The position numbers were made by a program, and so were the translations under genes. The notes under the pieces were generated by a model. That model did not search any database and was not told the origin of the DNA. It saw nothing but the letters and a program-made list of their open reading frames with translations. A DNA stretch of 64,000 nucleotides from contig OZ218958.1 of assembly GCA_965112735.1 (NCBI GenBank), positions 3,348,001-3,412,000 of the forward strand, read 5' to 3'. Numbering within the stretch: the first letter of the stretch is position 1; each line of letters begins with the position of its first letter. This stretch comes from Phaeosaccion multiseriatum. Taxonomy: Eukaryota; Protista; Ochrophyta, other classes. Shown here piece by piece: positions 9,867 through 22,442 of the stretch.

Positions 9867-10320
9867 GACATGGAAGCAAAGAAAGGCCCCACTCTCTTTC
9901 TTCTCAATGAGTCCTGCTGGCACTCATCCGCATCCCCTGTCGTCCTCCCGGCGAATCAGCCGTGCAGCCTTGGCTCATTGCGTCTTTTGTTGTGTCCTGT
10001 CACTCAAACGTTACATTTGGACGTTCGCGTGTTGGTGGTCCAAGCCTGTGAGCTGAAAACCCGCAAAACCCTGACCGGGGCCCCCGGAGAACACCCGCCT
10101 GTATCTTTCTGTCCTTCACAGCGCCATCTAAGGAAGGGCCTTACATTAAGCTGAACCTAGTCGCGCTCCGAAAGGGGAGGGGGGGGAAAGGTTCTCCTCA
10201 GCGATTCTCTGACTCTCCCTTCCTTCTTACAAGAAAGAAAAAGAGAAGGCCCTTTCTTTCGGATCACACACACGAATATATAACTGGAGTGCCGGGCTTG
10301 GGCAGCAGCAGGAGTGGAGC

Positions 10321-11968
10321 ATGGCGGTTGCAATAGGACCCCCCACGATTTCAACTCCTCCACATCAGCGGAGGCTGAGGGAACTCGTCCGCGGCCGGCC
10401 CTCAACGGGAATGTGGGGGGAAGGGGGCGCGAATACCGAGCCCACTCCTCCGCGCCCTGGTGCTGGGCCACCGCCTTTACGCGCGTCGCCTCCTCTTCGG
10501 ATTCGCTTCCGACCGATGTCTCCACCCGACCAAGACCAAGTGCAGTATCTTCACGAGACGTGCTTTCCTGTACGCTACAACGCAAACTTCTTCGCCGGAG
10601 TGGTGCGCGGAGAGGTGGAGAGGCGGGGAGTGAGAGAGCCCATCTATCACGAAGTTGCGGTCGTGAGCCTCGCCGACTCCATCGCCAGTAGGAACAGAGA
10701 CCGTGGGGCACAGGGAGGGGTTGAGACAGAGGGAGCAGAGGGAGATGCAGAGAGAGAGAGTGGAAGGCATGTGTGGAGAGACGAGGATGGCGGCGGGGAT
10801 GTGGAAGGAGGCGTTGAGGAGGGCATCGTGGCCGTTGCGACTGGCCAGCTTACTGCCCTCCACAAGTGCGAAGACAGGGATCGCTTGGGGCTGGGCTGGC
10901 CGCCAGCAACAGGAGGGAGGGGCATTGCTGCTGTTACTGGTATTGCTCGGGCTGTATCACCACCTGCTCCAGGGCCATCCAACATCCAAGTCATGTACAT
11001 TCTCACCCTTGGGACGCTAGAAGAGTACCGGAGACAGGTGAGGGAGGGAGAGAGGGAGGGAGGGGGGGGGGGGAGGGAGAGAAGGACAGGCAGGGAGGGA
11101 GGGAGGGAGGGAGGGTGGCTGGAGGAAAGGAGGGTGTGAGGGAGAGACCCAGACCAGCCATTCAATGCCCTGGCTCACACAGCGAAGGGCAGGACGATCA
11201 ATCAGAGAAAGGAGGAAGTGAAATGAAACGAATGCTCTTTCATCTTGCACTGCCCCAGGGCATTGGTCGGCTGCTGCTGGAGCGGCTCATCGCGTCGGCG
11301 AAGGCGTTGCCCACCTGTAAGGCGGTGTACCTACACGTCCTCGTGAATAACGACAGCGCAGTCGCCATGTATCGCGCTCTGGGCTTTGTGTGGCTCGGGC
11401 TGCTGGAGGGTAAGGCAGAGAGAGGCATATGGGCAGGGAGAGGGGGGTGGGTGGGGATGGATGGCAGTGGATGGAGGGCTTTGGCCTGGGGGTGGTAAGG
11501 ATCGTGGTGAGGCGGCGATCACAACCCCCCCTCTGTCTCTCTTTCCCTCTATCTATCTCTGCAAAGGCTTGATTTCATGCTTGCTTCCTTGAGAACTCTA
11601 CTCTCTTTCTCTTGTTACGTCTCGTGACGGACGGTCCATTCATTCGCTTCACTCCTCCCTCCTGAGCTGGCGCCTCGACCTCTCACTACCACAGCATCAC
11701 TTTCCTCTCTCTCCTCTCCTCTTCACCCCCTTCCTCCTGTTACCTCGGCCTCCCCCCTCCTCTCCGCTCCCCGCCCCTCCCGTCCTCTTCCCTCCCCACC
11801 TCTCCCCTCCCCTGCCCTCCCCTCCCCTCCCCTCCCCTCCTCCCCTCTGCACAGACTACTACACCATCGGGGGTGAGCGACACGACTGCCTCATCTACGC
11901 CCTCTATATCAACGGGGCCAGCGCGCCCTTCACCTTACCGCTCTACCCCTCCTTCCAGGCCCTATCTC

Positions 11969-12015
<47 letters not shown>

Positions 12016-13159
12016 GTGGTGTGTGTGTGACGAGAGCGCTGTTGGAATGGCACATGCAGCGCGAGTGCCTTCTGGCCTCTCCCCGCCCTCCTCCGTTGTG
12101 TGACTACTGATGTATCACCAACTGCTGCTCACCCACCCCCCACTATCTCTGTCTTCCCCGGCCTCCTCCCCTCCCCTCCTCTCCCCTCCCCTCGCCTCCC
12201 CTCCTCTCCTCTCCTCTCCTCTCCTCTCCCTTCCCCTCCCCTCCCCTCTCCCTTCCCCTTCCCTCCCGTCCCCTCCCCTCTCCCTTCCTTTCCCCTCCCC
12301 TCCCCTCCCCTCTCCCTTCCTCTCCCCTCCCCTCCCCTCCCCTCTCCCTTCCTCTCCCCTCCCCTCCCCTCCCCTCTCCCTTCCTCTCCCCTCCTTTCCC
12401 CTCCCCTCCCCTCCCCTCCTCTCCTCTCCTCTCCTCTCCTCTCCCCTCCCCTCTCCCCTCCCCTCTCCCTTCCTCCCCTCCCCTCCCCTCCCCTCCCCTC
12501 TCGCCTCCCCTCCTCTCCCCTTCCCTTGCCTCCCCTCCCCTCCCCTCTCCCTTCCCCTTCCCTCCCGTCCCCTCCCCTCTCCCTTCCTTTCCCCTCCCCT
12601 CCCCTCCCCTCTCCCTTCCTCTCCCCTCCCCTCCCCTCCCCTCTCCCTTCCTCTCCCCTCCCCTCCCCTCCCCTCCCCTCTCCCTTCCTCTCCTCCCCTC
12701 CCCTCTCGCCTCCCCTCCTCTCCCCTTCCCTTCCCTTCCCTCCCCTCGCCTCTCCCCTGCTGTAGTCGAGTACGGCGTGCCGCACGTATGGTGTGGGGCT
12801 GGTTCCACAAAGAGCAGCCCCGCCCCCCTCCCCGCTTCATCGGGGGGCAGAGAGGACAGACAGGGAGGCGGAGAGGACAGGGTGCAGAGCAGAGCGCTTC
12901 CAGAGGGGGGGGACAGGGAGTACAAGTGCAGGAGTTGGACATCCGCACTAAGCCGCCGCCAGCTGTGTGGCGGGCAGCAGGCGTCAGTTGTGGGGCAGAC
13001 GCTGGGCAGGGGTCTGGCAAGGCGTTGTGCAGCGGTGATGATGATGGGGCAGTTGGTGATACAGGGGCAGGGGGAGAGTCGTCCCGGCAGGGGCAGGGGC
13101 AGGGGCAGCGGCAGCAGTCGGCGGTACAGCAGCGGGAAGGGAGCCTTGACGTGTGCTGA
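10321..13159 (+). CDS. NAA60: N-alpha-acetyltransferase 60 (NatF)-like GNAT acetyltransferase
   Basis: Exons 10321-11037, 11259-11409, 11855-11969, 12766-13159 (GT-AG, in phase). Motifs IRFRPM..LHETCFPVRY, MYILTLG..EEYRRQGIG..LL, AVYLHVL.NN..A..MY..LGF, DYY.IGG...DC.IY.LYING. Basic/aromatic C-terminal segment RVRRAARMVWGWF. Confidence 0.82.
12150..12757. repeat. (CTCCC)n-type polypyrimidine tract in NAA60 intron 3
   Basis: About 600 bp almost exclusively C/T, built from CTCCC units, ending just before the acceptor at 12765. Confidence 0.95.
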
Positions 13160-13459
13160 GGCTGCGCTGGAACGGACTTTGCCGGACTGACTGGGGGAGA
13201 GGACACGGCACACACGCGCACACACACGGCTTGGTCATTTTGCGTGGAGTGCGGAGTGGAGACTTTGGAATGGATAGGGCGGAGGAGGGGGGCAGGGGGG
13301 AGAGGAGGGGAGATGGGCGTGGACGGAGGGGAGAGAGGTGCAGACGGAGGGGAGAGAGGTGCAAACGGAGGGGAGAGGTGCAGACAGAGGGGAGAAGTGC
13401 AGACGGAGGGGAGAGGAGTGCGGTGCGGTGACGTGCAGCACTTCATCCCGCAAAGCGCG

Positions 13460-13490
<31 letters not shown>

Positions 13491-13716
13491 GAATACTTGC
13501 ACACAGGGAGGGATGTGTGTATCGTATACAGAGAGGACATCCATAACATTGCCTCACCACCGGAGAGGGAAAGAGACGCATTCGATGACATAGTTGTTAG
13601 CATCTTCAATCAGATCATAGTAGATGGCATAATAGTTTTTATTCCTTTTATAATTAGAAGGAATAAAAAATGAAAGGGAAAGGGATGGCATGAAAGAATC
13701 AGGCGCGACGCAACAC

Positions 13717-15765
13717 CTAAATGTGGAGCACCATGAGGCGGCTGATGAACTCCTCCTCCCCCCCCGCCCCCTTGAGGAAGCGCTTGAGGGGTTTGAGTGC
13801 CAGTTTGATATGCCCCACCTGCCCTCCCAGCAGCGTACTCAACACAACAATCTCCTTCTGCTCTCCGTCCACCTCCATCTCGAACGCCGTCCGCAGAAGC
13901 TCCCCGGGGCTCACACTGCCACTCACACTGCCCCCGCCCTGTACCACCAACGGCTGACCCTGCCCCTGCCCCTGCCCCTGCCCCTGCCCGCTCGAGCTGC
14001 TTGCGCTCGTCGAGCTAGTGGAGCCTGAACTGCTCGAGCCTGGGCCTGATGATGAGGCTTGTGTGGATGAGGGCGAGGGTGAGGGTGCCACAGAGGAGCG
14101 AATGAACTCATCGCCAGTAAGGGCATCAAGGAGAATGATTTGGCCCACCACTCGGTTGGCCACGCAAATCACGTTGCGGTTCCACGGAAGCTGCCGAAGG
14201 AAGAACACAGGCAGCGAGAAGGGGGGCTTGTTCCTGCTGCTACTGCTGCTACTGCTGCTACCGTCAGTGCCTGCGTTGCCCCCTTGCCCCGCAGGACCTC
14301 CGTCTCCGTCTCCGCCTCCGCCTCCGCCTGGGGAGAGCGAGGGTGAGGGTGAAGGCGAGGGCGAAGGCGCTGCTGGCGGCTCGCCGGCGGGCCCGATGCA
14401 ATGCGTGGTGAGAAACAACCACCCCGTGTTGGTGTTCTCTAACCTGGCGACGGCCTCTGCCCCCCCCTCCGCCATAGCGCAGTCGACGCTCTGCTGAAGG
14501 TCCACAAGCTGAAGTTCGAGCAGCCCCATGGCATTTCGGGTCACCATTGCCACCGCCGGGAGTGGCGGCTCCGTGTTAGGGATGGTGACCAGCTGCGCAC
14601 CGAGTGTCTCGAACCCAAACGAGTGCTCCACCTGCCCATATGCCTGCGCATCCTCTTCCTCCTGCTGCTGCTGCTGCTGCTGCTGCTGTGTCCCCAGTGC
14701 CCCCTGCGCTCCCTGCGCTCCCTGCGCATGTGACTGTGGCTGCCCCCGCCCCTGCCCGGTGCTGAAGCGCCACAGATCCACCACCACCGTCCCGTCGGGC
14801 CTTGCCGCGCTCAGCATCCCCCAGTGCCCGTCCTGTGACAACTCGTATCGCAGCAGCCGGTCTTCCTCTTCCCCACCAGGCGGAGGAGGAGGAGGAGGAG
14901 GAGGAGGAAGGAGGCCCTCCCCCCCCCCCCCGCCTCCTCCTCCTCCACAGCTTTGCTTTAGCTTGGCCTTTGTCTTTGCTGACAAAGTGGCCCTCCTCCT
15001 CGCCTGCCTCGACCTCCCTACTTGGTCACCGGCCTCCAGGGGCACGTGCCACAGCCAAGCACGTTGGTCATCCACCATGGCCAGCGTCGTGCCGTTTACC
15101 CACTGCCACCACTTCACCATCGAGGGCTCCTCGCCCCCTCCTCCTCCTCCTCCTCCTCCTCCTCCTCCTCTTCCTCCCCCATAACACGTCGTCTCCTGCA
15201 GCATCTGGGCCCTGGGGAGAGAGTGCACCTGCAGCAATCCCGCCTCGTGAATAGCCAACACGGACTCGCTCTGGCAGGGACTCATGCTGACTCGATCGGC
15301 GTTGCCCGACGTCTCCGTCTGGACAGTCCTTCCACTGTGATCCCACATGTCGCACAGCAAGGCACATCCCCCCCGGCCCTTCCCGGGGGTTGCAGGAGCA
15401 GCAGTTGGTGATACGCCAGCAGCAGCAGTTGGTGATATGCCAGCAGCAGCTGCTTTCCCAAAGGCCGCGGGTCTGCACACGCACATGAGGCGAGGGTTGG
15501 AGGCGAGCAGAGCACACGACTTGGAGGCCGCAAGCACCTCCGGCAGCGACACGGAGTACGCCGAGAAGCCGCACATGGTCCTGCTAAACACCTCCCGAGT
15601 CACAGTTGGCGGGGCCAGGCGGGTGTTGCCCACTGACTGGGGGTCCTCCACCCCCACTTCGCCCTCCATCACGCTCAAGTCCACCAGCGGCTCCACTGCT
15701 GCTCCTGCGGCGGATGGATCACCAAACACCGCAGCAGAAAATGCAGCATCACTACTATTTTGTTG
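13717..15765 (-). CDS. Divergent clathrin heavy-chain N-terminal beta-propeller domain (C-terminal part of the kinase gene's last exon)
   Basis: Collinear blocks match the clathrin terminal domain (sequence recalled from memory): [24 protein letters not shown] ~ SADSAIMNP..VIALKAGKTLQIFNI; [23 protein letters not shown] ~ [23 protein letters not shown]; [15 protein letters not shown] ~ IINYRTDAKQKWLLL; [11 protein letters not shown] ~ GYIHLYDLETG; GGQVGHIKL ~ KGQVLSVCV. No clathrin leg repeats follow. Confidence 0.72.
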   Translation of the reverse strand, partial: QQNSSDAAFSAAVFGDPSAAGAAVEPLVDLSVMEGEVGVEDPQSVGNTRLAPPTVTREVFSRTMCGFSAYSVSLPEVLAASKSCALLASNPRLMCVCRPAAFGKAAAAGISPTAAAGVSPTAAPATPGKGRGGCALLCDMWDHSGRTVQTETSGNADRVSMSPCQSESVLAIHEAGLLQVHSLPRAQMLQETTCYGGGRGGGGGGGGGGGGEEPSMVKWWQWVNGTTLAMVDDQRAWLWHVPLEAGDQVGRSRQARRRATLSAKTKAKLKQSCGGGGGGGGGEGLLPPPPPPPPPPGGEEEDRLLRYELSQDGHWGMLSAARPDGTVVVDLWRFSTGQGRGQPQSHAQGAQGAQGALGTQQQQQQQQQEEEDAQAYGQVEHSFGFETLGAQLVTIPNTEPPLPAVAMVTRNAMGLLELQLVDLQQSVDCAMAEGGAEAVARLENTNTGWLFLTTHCIGPAGEPPAAPSPSPSPSPSLSPGGGGGGDGDGGPAGQGGNAGTDGSSSSSSSSRNKPPFSLPVFFLRQLPWNRNVICVANRVVGQIILLDALTGDEFIRSSVAPSPSPSSTQASSSGPGSSSSGSTSSTSASSSSGQGQGQGQGQGQPLVVQGGGSVSGSVSPGELLRTAFEMEVDGEQKEIVVLSTLLGGQVGHIKLALKPLKRFLKGAGGEEEFISRLMVLHI

Positions 15766-17105
15766 TGGGGGGGGGGGGGGTGCCTCGCTGCTGTGGTGAG
15801 GGCGGCGAGTTTCGATGACACCACGTCCCAGGTGGGCCGATCCATCACCACACGGTTACAGCATGCTCTGGAGTGGGTGGAGGGGGGGGGGGGGCAAAGG
15901 AGGGACGAGGGGGAGGAGAGTGGAACGTAAGGTAGAGAGGGGGGGAGAGGGGAGGGGGGGCGAGAGACAGGGAGAGAGAGGAACGAGAAAGGGAGAGAGA
16001 GGGGGGGGCGTGAGGACACCGCATGGTCCCGACGCCTCTGACGCCTCTGACGCCTTCCTTAATGCTGCTTACCGTGCTAGCCTGGCCAGGGGCTTGGCGC
16101 TCGCTTTAGTCCACGCCGCCATCGGATCGATGATCTCCTTCAACCGGCGGCTGCCTCCCCACGCCGCCTGAGGTACAGAAAGGGTAAGTAAGTAACCAAC
16201 AGTTCGTAAGAAGTTCATTAGGAAGGATAAAGGGAGGAGATGGGGGAGGAAGGAAGGAAGGAAGGAGGGAAGGAAGGAAGGAAGGAAGGAAGGAAGGAAG
16301 GAAGAAGCCCTCGACCCTCGCCCCTCCCCCCTTCCCTTGCCTTACTCACCTCTACCCTGTCCACGAGCCCGGGCGGCTCCTTATGTGCGGTGTACACACC
16401 ATCCCCCGTGAGGAGCTCCATCATCACCACTCCGAAGGCGTACACGTCGGTGCCTCTCGTCATGTTGCCCGTCTGATGGTATTGGGGGTCCATGTACCCA
16501 AACGTGCCTGCATGTAATACACACAACAAGCACCGCAATCAATGGTGACGTTGGTATGTACGGCCTTGCTGCCAACAGTGCTTGGCGAAACAGGGCAGCA
16601 GCACTACAGCGCGAGGGAAGGGGTGCAGTCAGCCCCGTTGAGCCCTAATGTACTAAGTATATAGCAGTATGTTGAGCCCACTGAGTCTCGGTACCGCTCC
16701 GTCAGTGAAAGAAACGAAACGAAACGAAACGAAACGAAACGAGGAGACGGATGGCAGAGCACGGCCTCCCCAGCCCTCCTCCCTCCCCCCCCTCCTCCTC
16801 CTCCTCCTCCTACCTTGCAGGCCGGCGCCCCCTTCGCCCCCCCTCCGGTCCCCCCCGTCGTCCCTCCTTTCACTGCGTGTGCGCTCCTCCTCCGCCCCCG
16901 CGTATCTCGACAGTCCAAAGTCCGCCACCACCGCGTTACCTCCATCGTCCAGCAGAATGTTCTCGGGCTTTGCACGGAGAGAGAGAGAGGGAGTGAATGA
17001 GAGAGAGAGGCAGCGCGAATGACAGAGGTAGGAGAGGGGGTTAGAGAGAGATTGAGAAAGAGGGAGGGAGGGAAGGAGAGGGAGAGTGTGCGTGCGTTCA
17101 GGGAG

Positions 17106-17146
<41 letters not shown>

Positions 17147-18439
17147 AGAGAAAAAGAGAGTGGCGTCTGGCGATGGATAGACACGCATCGCATCGCATCG
17201 CATCGCATCGCATCGCATCGCATCGCATCGCATCGCATCGCATCGCATGCTAAGGACGAGCGACCACCCACGGAACTCGCCCCCCCTACCCCCTCACCCC
17301 ATACCCCCTCACCCCCTACCCCCTCACCCCCTCACCCCCTCACCTTGACATCTCCGTGAATAACGCTCCTATTGAGGGGTGGGTGGGCGGCATCGTTGCT
17401 GTCCGTGTCCCTGCCGCTGTTTGGCCTAGGGAGGGGTCCGTCATCCCCGGAGTGAAGGTACTCGAGGCCTCTGCATACGTCCTGAGCAATGCGCACCCGG
17501 TCCTGAGACAGGACAGAGGGATGGCAGTGGATGGAGATGCGGGGGGGGGGGGGTTGGGGGGGTGAGCATCGATGTTGTGAGGGCGTGACTATAATCCCCC
17601 CCCCCCCCCCCACACACACACACACATACCTGCCAAGTCAGCTTCCTCCTCCTCTCCCTCGAGTCGAGGTGTATGCGGAGAGAGTTGTTGCGCATCAGGG
17701 CATACACCAAGCAGAGAGGGGACATGCTGCTGCTGCTGCTGCTGCTGCCGCCGCTGCTGCTGCTGCCGCCGCTGCTGCGCTGGTGGGGCGCCGCCCCGCT
17801 CGTACCAAGCAAAGGCACCACGTTCTGTGGACACGAGACAACACAGGATAAGATAAGATAAGATAAGATAAGCAGGGCAGGAGGGGGTGGCAGGAGACGA
17901 GCGGTATCAACAAGGGGCGTCGGCAGGGATGGCAGTGGATGGGAAGGAGGAAGGCCCTCTCTCTTCGAGCATCCCTCCCTCCACAAGTCGGATAGTGACT
18001 AGCAACCTGAAACTCATCCTGAAACTCCGTCCACCAGACGTTCTGCAGGGCGAGGTGAACGCACACGCACGCACACACGCACGCACACACGCACGCACAC
18101 ACGCACATGCAAAAACACACCGCAGACAGAAACAAGAGGCCAAGACAGAGACCGACTTGCCCCTCCCCCCCGTCACCCCTCACCCCCGTCACCCCCCTCA
18201 CCGCCTCACTCCCTCACTCCCTACTCCTCCCCCGCCTGACCTGATGTCTCAACATGGTGAGCATCTGCACCTCCTTATCGAATTGTCTCCGCCCCTGCAT
18301 GGAGGCCTCGTCAAGCTTCTTGACCGCCACCCCCACTCCCTGCAGGGTGCCTCGGTACACCTGCAGATAGAGGCGTATGGGATAAAGAGAGAGGCATGTC
18401 GACAGGCATGCAGAAGCATGAAGGCAGGCAAGTAAAGAA

Positions 18440-18485
<46 letters not shown>

Positions 18486-21400
18486 CAAGTGGTTGAAATG
18501 CGCACAGCAGGGTTGATAGAGTCACTCATTGAAGCCTCACAAGGAAGCCTTCGAGGCGATTTATGAGAGGTCGTCCATCCATCCACTGTCATCGCCACTC
18601 CCTCACTCACCCCCTCCCTCCCTCCCTCCCTCCCTCCCTCACTTACTCACTCACTCACTCACTTCTTCCCTCGGTCACTCCCTCCCTCCCTCCCTCCCCC
18701 ACTCACTCACTCACTCACTCACTTCTACATTCACTCACTCCCTCCCTCCCTCCCTCACTCACTCACTCACTCTCTCCCTCACTCACTCAATCACTTCCTC
18801 CATCAATCAATCACTCACTCAATCACTTCCTCCCTCCCTCACTGCCTCCCTCACTCACCCCCCTCACTCCCTCCCTCCCTCACCTTTCCGAAGCCTCCCT
18901 CCCCGATGATGTTGATGGCCGCCCAATTGTCGCACGCCGCAGACAGTTCCTCCTCGCTGAAGTCCTTCACAATCTCCGGCCCAGCGCCCCCGCCCCTTGC
19001 TCCTCCCCTCGCGTCCTCCTCCCCCTCCTCATCCTCTTCAGTCCCGCTCTGACCGCTCTGACCGCTCTGTCCACTGTGCCCACTCACACTCCTCCGGTGC
19101 GAGCGAGGAGGCGGTGGAGGGGCACCTCCTGTGGGGGAGGGCGGCATGGCGCTATCTAAGTACACCCCATTGCCGCCCGCACCATGGCCTCCGGTGTTAT
19201 AGTGACCCCCTCCACCCTCTCCGTCGCTTCCCAGCCCTTCCAGCCCCAGTAAGTCAACACCGAAGGCGTCTCCATACGCCTGTCCCGTCTCCTGCCCATG
19301 TGACTCCTGCCTTGACCATGACCCAGACACACCGCCACCCCCGGGGCTATCGCCGTCCTTATGCCCACCGTCCCCTCTTGCCTCTGACTCCTGGTCGCGG
19401 TCGGATTCTCCTCCTCCTCCTCCTCCTCCTCCTCCTCTCTCACCATTCCCGTTTCCATTCCCATTTCCGAGCCCGGACGATGCCCCCCGCTCCTTCCCCT
19501 CCTCCTTGTCCTGCTGGTGCCCCTGCCGCTGCTGCTCGGGCCTTCCGTGCAGCCTCTCATAAAGGCCGATGGAGTTGTTGGCCGTGTCAATCGAAGCGAG
19601 AAAGGGGGCAAAGTCCACGCCAACGCCCCCCTCAATGACTGCCCGAAGCTGCCGCCGTTTCTCCAGGCAAGACTCGTACAGCTTCTCGAGTTTCTGCTGC
19701 TGCTCCCTCTGCCGTTGTGACTCAATGTTTGTCCCTCTGCCGTTCGCACTGCTTGCATAGCGGGCCGCGTCTTCCTTCCCCCTCTGTTGTGCTCCGTCCA
19801 TGTTCTTCTGCCCCAGCCGCAGCAACTTCCTCGGCGAAGACGGACCCTCGAGACCGTTACCAGCGGCGTCCGCGGCCGCAGCAGCCATCGAGGCCTGCAC
19901 ACCTATGCCTTCGAGCAGAGCGGCTGCACTCGCATTCGAGTTGGCCACAAGGCCCTCCGCGCCCCCGCACTCCCCGCCTCCCACTACCCCTCCATCACTC
20001 GGCCCTCCTCCTCCACCTCCTCCTCCTCCTCCTCCTCCTACTGCTGCTGCTCCTCCTCCCCCTCCCCCTCCCCCCCCTCCTCCCCCTCCTCCTCCCCTTC
20101 CCGACCCACCCCCTCCCCCTCCCCAGCTGCTGCCGCTGCCGTGGAAGCGCTGCTGCCCGGAACCGCTGCCTCCTCCTCCTCCTCCTCCTCCTGCTCCTGC
20201 TGCTGTCCCATCTCTATGGGCCATGGGCATATGGGCAGGACTGACTCCGAGCACAATCCTCGTCATTTCCTCTCTCAGTTCCTCCCCCACCACCTCTTCG
20301 TCAATCAGCAGCACCGCCACAAGGCCCTCTGTGTCTCGCAGCGTCAGATCGGGCCCGTAGCGAACAAGCTCCTTCACCTGTTGGTGATACGGGCAGGCAG
20401 GGAGGGGAGGGGAGGGGAGGGGAGTGAGGGGGGGCGTCAGAGAGATAGTTGTAGTAAGTACTGCAGTGCATCCCCCCAGTGGTTGGCAGGGTAGGGCGTG
20501 ATACCATCCCCTCCATTTTGTGTGTGTGCACTGACTGACTGACTGACTGACTGACCGTGTCTATGAAGCCCTTGTTGACTGCCCAGTGGAGGGCGGTCCG
20601 GCCCCACCCGTCTTGTGCATTGAGCTGCGCCCCCGAGTACAGCAGCTCCCCGCACACCGCCGCCTGCCAGAGGGGATGGCAGCACATGGCAGTGGATGGC
20701 AGCACATGGCAGTGGATGGCAGGGGCGGGGTCAGGCTTCGGGTCAGGATGAGGGTAACGCTCAAGGCAAGGGGGTGGTTAGTCTCAGGCTCAGGCCCAGG
20801 CTCAGGCCCAGGCTCAGGCCCAGGCTCAGTTTCTTCCCCACACCACAGGCAGGGCCAGACAGTGGCGGCATAAGTCAATGGGCTAAGTCAATAAGTCGAG
20901 GACTGCTCTTGTTGCTGCTTGTGCCGCAAGGTGCAAACCACCCAAGTAGAGACAGACCGGCCATCGCTATACCTACCCATCGCTAGACCGTATAGCCCAC
21001 CACCGCTATACCCTATACCCTATGCCCTATGCCCTACCTGTCCGTTCCCTGCGGCCCAGCTCAGCGCCCCCCTGCCCGAGAGGTCCTTGGTGCTCACATC
21101 GGCCCCTGCGTTGAGCAGGCAGCGGCACTGGAGGGGGGGGGGGGGTATCACGGTTGAGGTGGATGGGTTGGGCCCAAGCAGGGGAGAGGAGGAGGAGCAG
21201 AGGAATGGTTCAGGAAGAGCACACCAATGAATGAAACCCGAAACAGGGCAAGGGCGCTGCTGACTGTCTCAAAGCCATGCACCTCACCCCCCCCTCCCCC
21301 CCCCTCTCCCTGTCCTCCCTCCCTCCCCTCCTGCCTCTCTGCCTCTTCCCTTCCTCACCGTCTCTACGTGCCCCTTGGCGGCTGCCCACATGAGCGCAGT

Positions 21401-22442
21401 GGCGCCGAACTGCCCATCCACGCCCTTCACGTCGGCCCCGAGGCTCAGCAAATGAGAAACTAGGGAAGCGGATGGCAGTTCACGTCATGTGGTGGTGAGT
21501 TTTAGTTTTTAGTGTTGTGGAGGAGAGGAGGGAGGAGAGTGTCAGAGATGGAAGCATGACGTTCGCTTTGCTTGCGTGAATTGCCCGTTATTCCTGCGGG
21601 AGGGGCAGAGTATGCTATGCTATCGAGGGAAGGTGCCCCGCCCTCCACTCATGGCCAGAGTGGGCGCCAGATTGCTGCCTGAAGGCGTGCGATAGACAAG
21701 AGCGACTGGAGTGATTGGAGCTCTTACTTGTGGCTGTGTGGCCTTCATTGGCCACCCAGTGCAGAAGAGGGGCACCGACATTGCCGTCCAGAGCGTTCAC
21801 GAGGCCTAAGATGGGGGGAGGGAGGAGGGGCGAATGGAAGGGGAGACGGAAGGAAGGAAGGAAGGAAGGAAGGAAGGAAGGAAGGAAGGGAGGGAGGGAG
21901 GGAGGGAGGGAGGGAGGGAGGGAAGGAAGGAGGAGGGAGACCGATGTGCAGGCAGGGAGACGGGAAGGCGGGCAGCCGAGATGGTGAGTTCCGGTAGACA
22001 CTGCGAAGAAGAGAGGGCGCAGCGCACGACGTGCCTGCCACTTGGAGAGCTCCGCCCATCACTCACCTCTCCCTCTCGGGCTGCTCAAGAACGAAGCCAG
22101 CTGGTCCCAATCGTGTCTGCTGATGAGCAGGAAAGGGTCCACCGACTGCGACTGGTATGGAGACTGATTTGGAGCGAAGCTGGAGTTGTATGTGGAGTAC
22201 CCTTGCGGGGGGAGCTGAGAAGCGTGCGCCACCGGATACGCGTACTGCGGCAGGGGCTGGGGCACGGGCTGGGGCTCTTGGTAGTAGACGGGCCGCGGCT
22301 GGTGCGGCTGCGGCTGCGGCTGCTGCTGTTGCCGTTGCTGCTGCAGCTGAGGCGGCGGCTGCTGCCGTTGCGGCGGCGGCTGCTGCTGGTGCTCATCGAG
22401 ATGCAGCCTCGGCCTCCGCCTGCTGCTTCCGAAGCCGAACAT
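13717..22442 (-). CDS. Ankyrin-repeat + non-RD IRAK/RLK-Pelle-like Ser/Thr kinase with C-terminal clathrin-terminal-domain-like propeller (1-nt frameshift in G14 at 15767-15780)
   Basis: Exons 22442-22067, 21805-21728, 21459-21359, 21127-21038, 20663-20556, 20377-18884, 18360-18241, 17824-17630, 17502-17344, 16967-16814, 16507-16350, 16167-16073, 15867-13717, all GT-AG and in phase. Ankyrin repeats: [52 protein letters not shown]. Kinase motifs: [99 protein letters not shown]. Confidence 0.85.
17185..17247. repeat. (CGCAT)n pentanucleotide microsatellite, intronic
   Basis: Direct tandem GCATC/CGCAT run in kinase intron 16968-17343. Confidence 0.95.

What the first reader, a model, noticed from the sequence alone, without database searches (positions are those of the whole stretch)
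13717..22442. Ankyrin - non-RD IRAK/Pelle-type kinase - clathrin terminal-domain fusion protein
Seen: a 13-exon, phase-consistent gene with 4 ankyrin repeats and a complete kinase. Its last exon continues into ~670 aa with ordered block similarity to the clathrin heavy-chain N-terminal 7-blade propeller ([39 protein letters not shown]), with no triskelion leg after it. Established: the Tyr gatekeeper (CLVY), the F.xEL..A..NW pre-motif and GTFGY.DP are IRAK/RLK-Pelle hallmarks. HGD instead of HRD (non-RD) is associated with innate-immune pattern-recognition kinases. The clathrin terminal domain is the docking site for clathrin-box adaptors, and some pathogen proteins bind it too. Inference: a kinase carrying a stand-alone clathrin propeller could be an 'integrated decoy' sensor of proteins that target endocytosis, or a kinase recruited to endocytic adaptors. 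I know of no described protein with this architecture.
Basis: partly seen in the sequence, partly recalled or inferred. Interest (0 to 1): 0.9.

Follow-up and report, generated by a model that had tools for sequence, protein, structure and literature searches.

The report
Kinase fused to a clathrin-head copy
This alga, like brown algae, has a signalling kinase that ends in a stand-alone copy of the clathrin head, the propeller that normally docks vesicle-coat adaptors; I found no paper describing this combination.

Summary
The 13-exon minus-strand gene is real: all introns are GT-AG and the phases fit. It encodes four ankyrin repeats and a complete, probably active kinase.

The kinase is IRAK/Pelle/RLK-type, with a Tyr gatekeeper and HGD in place of HRD.

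The 670-aa downstream ORF is a true clathrin terminal-domain homologue, not a generic WD40. A profile of its family matched only clathrin heavy chains in the PDB (E 2.6e-13). A confident model of an orthologue gave 39 clathrin terminal domains as its top Foldseek matches (E 2e-24, TM 0.73-0.79). The nearest WD40 scored E 2.5e-9. No clathrin leg follows.

One correction. In the window as assembled, the kinase frame stops at 15675 and the propeller lies in another frame. Contigs of four public runs, all from one sample, carry a 15th C in the run at 15767-15780. That extra C fuses the two frames into a 1759-aa protein.

Brown-alga orthologues, such as a 1402-aa Ascophyllum protein, show the same ankyrin-kinase-linker-propeller order. 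The architecture is therefore conserved. It sits in databases as "unnamed protein product".

The domain is well conserved between brown-algal orders, and the linker carries clathrin-box-like and PPPY motifs. This favours a trafficking-docked kinase over an immune decoy. Function and transcript continuity are untested.

The parts
22067..22442 (-). Exon 1: start codon and a Q/P-rich N-terminus. Its last ~25 residues align with the N-terminus of the Ascophyllum orthologue.
20556..21805 (-). Exons 2-5 (21805-21728, 21459-21359, 21127-21038, 20663-20556), one ankyrin repeat each.
   Evidence: GT-AG and phases; Pfam Ank hits; 44% identity to the four-repeat Ank region of P0045
18884..20377 (-). Exon 6: end of the ankyrin domain, about 430 aa of low-complexity or coiled linker with no Pfam domain, the pre-kinase motif [13 protein letters not shown] and the glycine loop IGEGGFGK.
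16073..18360 (-). Exons 7-12 of the kinase: 18360-18241 (VAVKK), 17824-17630 (gatekeeper CLVYALM), 17502-17344 (non-RD HGDVK), 16967-16814 (DFG), 16507-16350 (GTFGYMDP), 16167-16073.
13717..15867 (-). Exon 13: kinase subdomain XI, the poly-C run, a short linker and the clathrin-terminal-domain-like propeller, up to the stop at 13719-13717.
15767..15780 (-). Homopolymer of 14 C (poly-Pro codons). Contigs of four public runs have 15 C, which joins the kinase frame to the propeller frame.
15675..15677 (-). Stop codon of the kinase frame in the window as assembled (1106-aa product). It is bypassed if the run has 15 C.
15670..15690 (-). PLVDLSV, a clathrin-box-like motif in the linker. It lies in the propeller frame, at the position of DLL[QGE]LFD in brown-alga orthologues.
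   Evidence: motif definitions from PMC5694535
13720..15588 (-). Clathrin-terminal-domain-like seven-blade propeller plus the first linker helices. Its loops carry poly-G, poly-P, poly-Q, poly-S, SP and GQ insertions.

Best explanation
**What it is.** One gene encodes a cytosolic protein of about 1759 aa. In order it has:
- four ankyrin repeats;
- a long disordered stretch;
- an IRAK/Pelle/RLK-type non-RD Ser/Thr kinase with all catalytic residues;
- a short linker with a clathrin-box-like motif;
- a C-terminal paralogue of the clathrin heavy-chain terminal domain, with no leg.

**What is shown.** The parts, their order, their homology and their conservation from this alga to brown algae.

**What is inferred.**
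- The propeller still works as a peptide-in-groove docking module for short linear motifs of the clathrin-box or DLL kind. It would bring the kinase to adaptor or accessory proteins of vesicle coats, or compete with clathrin for them.
- The motif in its own linker would then serve either as an intramolecular pseudo-ligand (autoinhibition or head-to-tail assembly) or as a hook for genuine clathrin.
- In brown algae the two PPPY motifs would add Nedd4-type WW-domain ligases.

The 14-C run in the assembly is read as a homopolymer error.
For: **Gene model.** 13 exons, all introns GT-AG, phases consistent.

**Frame fusion.** All spanning contigs of four runs have a 15th C. This gives one 1759-aa ORF.

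**Same junction in relatives.**
- P0002 carries the kinase C-lobe, the linker and the propeller.
- 13 of the 19 relative fragments scanned hold both the end of the kinase and the start of the propeller in a single sequence. Some of these are spliced gene models, others ORFs called on short contigs.

**Whole architecture in brown algae.**
- Ascophyllum P0045 (1402 aa) has Ank x4, Pkinase at 391-668 and the propeller at 898-1390.
- Ectocarpus sp. 4 P0050 (1391 aa) carries Ank and Pkinase.
- The exons are collinear on contig L006/L004.
- The window protein is collinear with P0045: 44%, 43% and 27% identity in the three domains.

**Clathrin homology.**
- A family profile hits only clathrin heavy chains in the PDB: E 2.6e-13, two collinear stretches reaching into the first linker helix, next hit E 0.82.
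- The AF2 model of orthologue P0001 has pLDDT 79 and pTM 0.82.
- Its top 39 Foldseek PDB hits are all clathrin terminal domains (E 2e-24 to 3e-18, TM 0.73-0.79). G-beta follows at 2.5e-9.
- The eight best AlphaFold DB cluster matches are clathrin heavy chains or unnamed entries matched over the same N-terminal stretch.
- Language-model features of the window ORF point to clathrin first.

**Groove.** In the alignment to clathrin residues 45-100, Q89 and the hydrophobic floor (I52, I62, I80, I93) are kept. A basic residue persists at 95-98.

**Linker.** DLL[QGE]LFD occurs in 16 of 19 brown-alga fragments, PP.Y in 19 and two copies in 15. DLL/DLF and L-phi-x-phi-[DE] are known terminal-domain ligands (PMC5694535).

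**Conservation, Ascophyllum versus Ectocarpus.** Kinase 86%, propeller 74%, linker 38%.
Against: - No transcript evidence. The only runs found cover the introns at exon-like depth, so they look like DNA and say nothing on splicing or on a single mRNA.
- All four runs are one sample and may be the sample the genome was assembled from. The 15th C is not independent of the strain.
- The window's own propeller gave a poor model (pLDDT 48) and no Pfam Clathrin_propel hit.
- In the window protein the two lysines of the clathrin-box site (K96, K98) are Ala and Met, F91 is His, and R64 is Thr. The groove may bind something else.
- The linker motifs are not perfect clathrin boxes. The window lacks PPPY.
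- The other three binding sites of the terminal domain could not be mapped.
- No binding, localisation or kinase activity was tested.
Confidence: 0.55

Rival explanations
1. The propeller descends from the clathrin terminal domain but has changed its job. It would now be a general scaffold, dimerisation or substrate-recruiting domain of the kinase, as the C-terminal WD40 is in LRRK2-type kinases, with ligands unrelated to clathrin boxes.
For: - Only about 16% identity to clathrin in structural alignments.
- Site-1 lysines are lost in the window protein and are variable in relatives.
- No Pfam Clathrin_propel match.
- Large loop insertions.
- The ANK-TKL kinase-propeller order recalls LRRK2 (established knowledge).
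Against: - Q89 and the hydrophobic groove floor are kept.
- The conserved linker motifs are of the endocytic kind.
- Homology extends into the clathrin linker helix.
Confidence: 0.25
2. Integrated decoy. The clathrin-head copy would be bait for pathogen proteins that target the clathrin terminal domain, and the non-RD IRAK-like kinase would signal when the bait is bound.
For: - Non-RD IRAK/RLK kinases are linked with pattern recognition (established knowledge). HGD is conserved here.
- Viral peptides do bind the terminal domain (PMC5694535).
- The domain sits outside its normal protein.
Against: - No NLR, TIR, LRR or other receptor module.
- The propeller is 74% identical between two brown-algal orders, close to the kinase (86%) and far above the linker (38%). 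It behaves like a constrained housekeeping domain, not a bait in an arms race.
- The family is small in the databases: 15 representatives in 1.84 billion.
Confidence: 0.1
3. In this organism the two parts are separate. The kinase gene truly ends at 15675, and the propeller is a gene of its own or a decaying remnant. The 15-C contigs would reflect a homopolymer artefact or a polymorphism.
For: - The assembly as given has 14 C and a stop at 15675.
- The Tribonema transcript P0003 encodes the propeller alone from a Met.
- All four runs come from one sample.
Against: - Every spanning contig in four runs has 15 C and none has 14.
- The conserved linker motif PLVDLSV lies in the propeller frame upstream of the as-given stop.
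- Relatives carry the junction in a single sequence.
- The frame-1 tail after the C run (about 30 aa) matches nothing.
Confidence: 0.07

Closest known systems
Clathrin heavy chain N-terminal (terminal) domain, e.g. PDB 1BPO, 1C9I, 5M5R
   Same: - Seven-blade propeller, collinear over the whole domain and into the first linker helix.
- It is the only PDB family hit by the sequence profile.
- It fills the top 39 fold matches.
- Q89 and the hydrophobic residues of the blade 1-2 groove are retained.
   Different: - It sits at the C-terminus of a kinase, not at the N-terminus of a triskelion leg.
- No CHCR repeats and no trimerisation region.
- About 16% identity to clathrin.
- Long low-complexity loop insertions.
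- Site-1 lysines are not kept in the window protein.
- No Pfam Clathrin_propel hit.
IRAK/Pelle/RLK kinases (IRAK4, BAK1, SymRK, BIK1-type RLCKs)
   Same: - Best and exclusive PDB matches.
- Tyr gatekeeper.
- Pre-kinase F..EEL..A...(F/W) motif.
- GTFGYMDP.
- The non-RD variant, as in several immune receptor kinases.
   Different: - No death domain, no transmembrane or extracellular part.
- Ankyrin repeats at the N-terminus and a propeller at the C-terminus.
- A long acidic/basic insertion in the activation segment.
LRRK2/ROCO-type TKL kinases (ANK ... kinase-WD40)
   Same: - Ankyrin repeats upstream of, and a seven-blade propeller directly downstream of, a TKL-group kinase.
- LRRK2 acts in membrane traffic (established knowledge).
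   Different: - No Roc-COR GTPase and no LRR.
- The propeller is of the clathrin type, not WD40.
- The kinase is of the IRAK/RLK branch.
Clathrin-associated kinases (AAK1, GAK/auxilin, SCYL2)
   Same: Kinases tied to clathrin coats. They carry DLL, DPF or clathrin-box motifs in disordered tails, as this protein's linker may. PDB 9F8T is the terminal domain bound to the AAK1L C-terminus.
   Different: Those kinases bind the clathrin terminal domain. This one carries a terminal domain of its own.
Integrated decoy domains of plant NLRs
   Same: A host target domain copied into a signalling protein.
   Different: No NLR chassis. The domain is strongly conserved across orders rather than lineage-specific or variable.

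Membership tests
Clathrin terminal-domain fold/superfamily | Sequence profile matches clathrin heavy-chain N-terminal domains specifically | tested here: met
   The profile of the window ORF plus 5 relatives gave 18 clathrin entries at E 2.6e-13 to 5e-5. The next hit was at 0.82.
Clathrin terminal-domain fold/superfamily | Seven-blade propeller that superposes on solved terminal domains better than on other propellers | tested here: met
   For orthologue P0001 (pLDDT 79), the top 39 hits were clathrin terminal domains at E 2e-24 to 3e-18 and TM 0.73-0.79, against WD40 at 2.5e-9 and TM 0.54. For the window's own model (pLDDT 48) the top 39 hits were the same, but TM was only 0.2-0.36.
Clathrin terminal-domain fold/superfamily | Pfam Clathrin_propel repeats detected | tested here: not met
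   No Pfam family at E <= 1 on the window ORF. None at E <= 0.01 on 17 relatives.
Clathrin terminal-domain fold/superfamily | Clathrin-box groove residues (I52, I62, R64, I80, T87, Q89, F91, I93, K96, K98) | tested here: inconclusive
   From: the hydrophobics and Q89 are kept in the window, Choristocarpus, Discosporangium and Tribonema sequences. F91 is H/Y/F. K96 and K98 are R/K in brown algae but A and M in the window, which has R at 95. R64 is T or Y. The residue numbers come from my recall of bovine clathrin and agree with the printed alignment.
Clathrin terminal-domain fold/superfamily | Binds L-phi-x-phi-[DE], DLL or W-box peptides | not testable with these tools
   Needs pull-down, ITC or a co-structure.
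Clathrin heavy chain (the protein) | Terminal domain followed by linker, CHCR leg repeats and a trimerisation hub (about 1675 aa) | tested here: not met
   The ORF and all relatives end about 25 residues after the propeller. The domain is C-terminal to a kinase.
IRAK/Pelle/RLK kinase family (TKL group) | Closest to family members over the whole catalytic domain | tested here: met
   Orthologue kinase: SymRK 4e-43, BAK1 3e-42, IRAK4 1e-36; first non-member CTR1 at 1.5e-22. Window exons 6 and 11 hit only RLK, RLCK and IRAK chains. No tree was built.
IRAK/Pelle/RLK kinase family (TKL group) | Tyr gatekeeper | tested here: met
   CLVYRLM of the orthologue aligns with ILVYPFM of SymRK and LLVYPYM of BAK1. 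The window has CLVYALM at the same place.
IRAK/Pelle proper | N-terminal death domain | tested here: not met
   Pfam finds only Ank and kinase domains.
Non-RD kinases | Arg before the catalytic Asp is replaced | tested here: met
   HGDVKPEN in the window. VVHGDIKPEN in the brown-alga orthologues aligns to IHRDIK of SymRK and BAK1.
Integrated-decoy immune receptors | Decoy domain joined to an NLR or other receptor chassis, usually lineage-specific | tested here: not met
   No NB-ARC, TIR or LRR. The propeller is 74% identical between Fucales and Ectocarpales.
LRRK/ROCO kinases | Roc GTPase plus COR domain | tested here: not met
   No such Pfam hit in exon 6 or in P0045.

The most novel reading that the evidence does not exclude
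The clathrin-head copy binds the same adaptor motifs as clathrin itself. The conserved DLLxLFD or LVDLS motif in the protein's own linker occupies its groove until adaptors, or foreign proteins that mimic them, displace it and switch on the non-RD kinase. The protein would then be a sensor of the state of the endocytic adaptor pool, or of its hijacking. It would also be the first case of the clathrin terminal domain used as a signalling receptor module.
Probability: 0.12. Interest if true: 0.85.

Novelty: new variant of a known kind. Interest (0 to 1): 0.64.

Why it matters
The clathrin terminal domain is treated as a part found only at the tip of the clathrin leg, where it gathers adaptors.

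Here a diverged but recognisable copy has been cut loose and welded to an IRAK/RLK-type kinase. The combination has been kept from this alga to brown algae and probably to yellow-green algae. That implies a second, non-coat use of this peptide-docking module.

It also gives a concrete handle on how traffic and phosphorylation are coupled in a lineage that evolved multicellularity on its own.

The hypothesis is directly testable: peptide binding by the isolated propeller, and knock-out or tagging in Ectocarpus.

There is a practical point too. The family is labelled "unnamed" or "conserved unknown protein" in public proteomes and is often split by gene callers, so it could be annotated now.

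Tried and rejected
- Pfam on the window ORF and on 17 relatives found nothing for the propeller.
- Single-sequence phmmer of the window ORF against the PDB returned only low-complexity artefacts, such as GGGGSGGGG linkers of NS2B-NS3 constructs. The profile was needed.
- AF2 on the window's own domain was poor (pLDDT 48) because of the loop insertions, so the orthologue P0001 was modelled instead.
- The search for RNA runs returned four runs that cover introns at exon-like depth. They are DNA-like, so there is no splice or transcript evidence.
- The contigs carrying P0001 and P0002 end before the upstream exons.
- In the Ectocarpus siliculosus v1 locus only the last two kinase exons were found upstream of the annotated "conserved unknown protein". 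The stretch contains 300 N.
- An unfiltered tblastn drowned in poly-G and poly-P matches.
- A 35-aa gatekeeper piece alone hit nothing in the PDB.
- A word-based search with the Ascophyllum propeller for long relatives found only three proteins and no clathrin. It says little about distribution.
- I considered programmed frameshifting at the C run and set it aside, because the reads give a simpler answer.
- Some in-frame low-complexity loops could be unrecognised introns. This cannot be decided without RNA.

Full report
**1. The gene**

On the minus strand I rebuilt a 13-exon model from 22442 to 13717. Every intron is GT..AG and the phases are consistent.
- Exon 1 is Q/P-rich.
- Exons 2-5 each encode one ankyrin repeat.
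- Exon 6 finishes the ankyrin domain. It then runs through about 430 aa of low-complexity sequence with no Pfam domain and ends in the glycine loop.
- Exons 7-12 and the start of exon 13 complete a kinase with every catalytic motif: VAVKK, the C-helix Glu, [19 protein letters not shown] and the subdomain XI Arg.

**2.

In the window as given, the kinase frame runs through a run of 14 C (15780-15767) and stops at 15677-15675. This gives 1106 aa. The 670-aa ORF at 15729-13717, open from 15855, is in a different frame. One extra C would join the two frames.

Read laying shows exactly that. In all four public runs that hold the stretch, the contig spanning the site has a G put in behind 15766 on the + strand, which makes 15 C on the minus strand. 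No other difference is shared by all four runs. With 15 C the model gives a single 1759-aa ORF.

Two cautions apply.
- The four runs are one sample, possibly the one the genome was assembled from.
- Their contigs cover introns at exon-like depth. They behave as DNA and say nothing about splicing.

Independent support comes from relatives.
- Discosporangium P0002 holds the kinase C-lobe, the linker and the propeller in one protein.
- 13 of the 19 relative fragments scanned hold both the end of the kinase (subdomain XI) and the start of the propeller in one sequence. Some of these are spliced gene models, others ORFs called on short contigs.
- The window's counterpart of a conserved linker motif (PLVDLSV, 15690-15670) lies in the propeller frame upstream of the as-given stop.

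I conclude the fusion is real with about 90% confidence. The 14-C run is most likely a homopolymer error.

**3. The C-terminal domain**

Alone, the window ORF gives no Pfam hit and only low-complexity noise against PDB sequences. Protein-language-model features already rank clathrin heavy-chain fragments first, followed by Vps16 and COPI propellers.

An exhaustive HMMER search of 1.84 billion representatives found 15 relatives, the best at E 7.6e-23. A profile search found 40.
- Named sources are the brown algae Choristocarpus, Discosporangium, Ectocarpus spp., Hapterophycus and Ascophyllum.
- One transcript comes from the yellow-green alga Tribonema gayanum.

The window ORF aligns end to end with these relatives at 30-35% identity. 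All its poly-G, poly-P, poly-Q, poly-S, SP and GQ runs fall in loops as private insertions.

A profile of six family members hits only clathrin heavy chains in the PDB.
- E is 2.6e-13, and the next hit is at E 0.82.
- Two collinear stretches match: clathrin residues 45-138 and 264-356.
- The second stretch reaches into the NPDLALRMA helix that begins the clathrin linker.

AlphaFold2 on the Choristocarpus orthologue gave pLDDT 79 and pTM 0.82.
- Foldseek against the PDB returned 39 clathrin terminal domains first: E 2e-24 to 3e-18, TM by target 0.73-0.79.
- After a gap of nine orders of magnitude came G-beta and other WD40 propellers.
- In AlphaFold DB clusters the eight best matches are clathrin heavy chains or unnamed entries matched over the same N-terminal stretch.

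The window's own model is poor (pLDDT 48). Its top 39 matches are nevertheless the same clathrin entries, though with low TM scores.

The family ends about 25 residues after the propeller, so there is no leg.

**4. The architecture is conserved**

- The Ascophyllum protein P0045 (1402 aa, "unnamed protein product") has four Pfam ankyrin repeats, Pkinase at 391-668 and the propeller at 898-1390.
- Ectocarpus sp. 4 P0050 (1391 aa) carries Ank and Pkinase domains as well.
- On a 1.3-Mb brown-alga contig the ankyrin exons, the kinase exons and the propeller lie in order on one strand.
- The window protein is collinear with P0045: 44% identity in the ankyrin part, 43% in the kinase and 27% in the propeller.
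- In Ectocarpus siliculosus v1 the propeller is annotated alone as "conserved unknown protein", although kinase exons lie just upstream.

**5. The kinase**

- Window exon pieces hit only plant RLK/RLCK and IRAK chains.
- The orthologue's whole domain hits SymRK (4e-43), BAK1, Pto, FERONIA, BIK1, BRI1 and IRAK4 (1e-36). The first outsider, CTR1, comes at 1.5e-22.
- In the printed alignments the gatekeeper Tyr and the HGD-for-HRD change are in register with SymRK and BAK1.
- HGD is conserved in brown algae.
- There is no death domain, so this is an IRAK/RLK-branch kinase and not an IRAK orthologue. No tree was built.

**6. Clues to function**

*The linker.* In 19 brown-alga fragments that cover the linker, DLL[QGE]LFD occurs in 16, PP.Y in all 19 and two copies in 15. 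Two sequences, Discosporangium and Tribonema, have an NPF. The window, with a much shorter linker, has PLVDLSV. DLL/DLF and L-phi-x-phi-[DE] are established ligands of the terminal domain (PMC5694535). PPxY and NPF are classic endocytic sorting motifs (established knowledge).

*The groove.* In the alignment to clathrin residues 45-100, Q89 and the hydrophobic floor of the blade 1-2 groove are kept throughout. The basic rim (K96, K98) is Arg or Lys in brown algae but Ala and Met in the window, which has Arg at 95.

*Conservation.* Between Ascophyllum and Ectocarpus the kinase is 86% identical, the propeller 74% and the linker 38%. This is the pattern of folded domains under constraint joined by a disordered linker that keeps only short motifs.

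**7. Reading**

*Most likely (0.55).* A cytosolic kinase is docked by a clathrin-head paralogue to motif-bearing adaptor or accessory proteins of vesicle traffic. Its own linker motif acts as a pseudo-ligand or as a hook for genuine clathrin. Shown: parts, order, homology and conservation. Inferred: ligand type, localisation, regulation and activity.

*Rivals.*
- A re-purposed propeller with other ligands, as in LRRK2 (0.25).
- An integrated decoy (0.10). No receptor chassis is attached, and the domain is too conserved.
- Truly separate genes in this organism (0.07).

**8. Novelty**

Three full-text searches found no paper on a kinase carrying a clathrin terminal domain. Notes of this scan on the same genome do not mention clathrin.

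The proteins are public but unnamed. I rate this a new variant of a known kind: a multi-domain TKL kinase with a C-terminal propeller. Its unusual point is that the propeller is a clathrin terminal domain outside clathrin.

As far as these searches see, the family is confined to brown algae, Tribonema and this alga.

**9. Limits**

- No RNA evidence.
- The phylogenetic origin of the propeller was not tested.
- The other three binding sites of the terminal domain were not mapped.
- The window's own structure model is weak.
- Gene copy number is not known.

Noticed in passing
Relatives P0005-P0013, P0016, P0018, P0036-P0044 (linker between kinase and propeller): The poorly conserved linker of brown-alga orthologues keeps three short motifs in fixed order: DLL[QGE]LFD, then two PPPY. 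Discosporangium and Tribonema have NPFL(Q)HGG instead. These look like endocytic short linear motifs: clathrin/DLL, WW-domain and EH-domain ligands.
   Followed up: partly
L001:9290-9922 (Ectocarpus siliculosus FN649742.1), upstream of the gene at 10001-12734: The published "conserved unknown protein" (P0018, 645 aa) is a truncated model. The last two kinase exons lie 80-700 bp upstream on the same strand. The stretch also contains 300 N.
   Followed up: partly
window 12110-13581: Just downstream of the gene lies about 1.4 kb of two-strand low-complexity repeat. It reads as SPLPSPP on one strand and GEGRGGE on the other, giving long spurious ORFs of 349-488 aa.
   Followed up: no
window 17190-17260, 18600-18860, 16260-16320, 21840-21960: The introns of the gene are packed with microsatellites: (GCGAT)n, (TGAG/GGGA)n and (CCTT)n. 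The public-run contigs break at these.
   Followed up: no
window 13758, 15939, 15954, 16001, 16326, 16837, 16850, 17280, 18165: Run X4 alone shows further 1-2 base deletions, including a 2-base one at 13758 inside the last codons of the propeller ORF. Runs X1-X3 do not. This is probably noise of that library rather than variation.
   Followed up: no
AlphaFold DB cluster hit A0A1Q9EER4: A 695-aa protein named clathrin heavy chain aligns to the propeller at its residues 228-637. The terminal-domain-like part is not N-terminal there. This may be another displaced clathrin head in a different protist.
   Followed up: no
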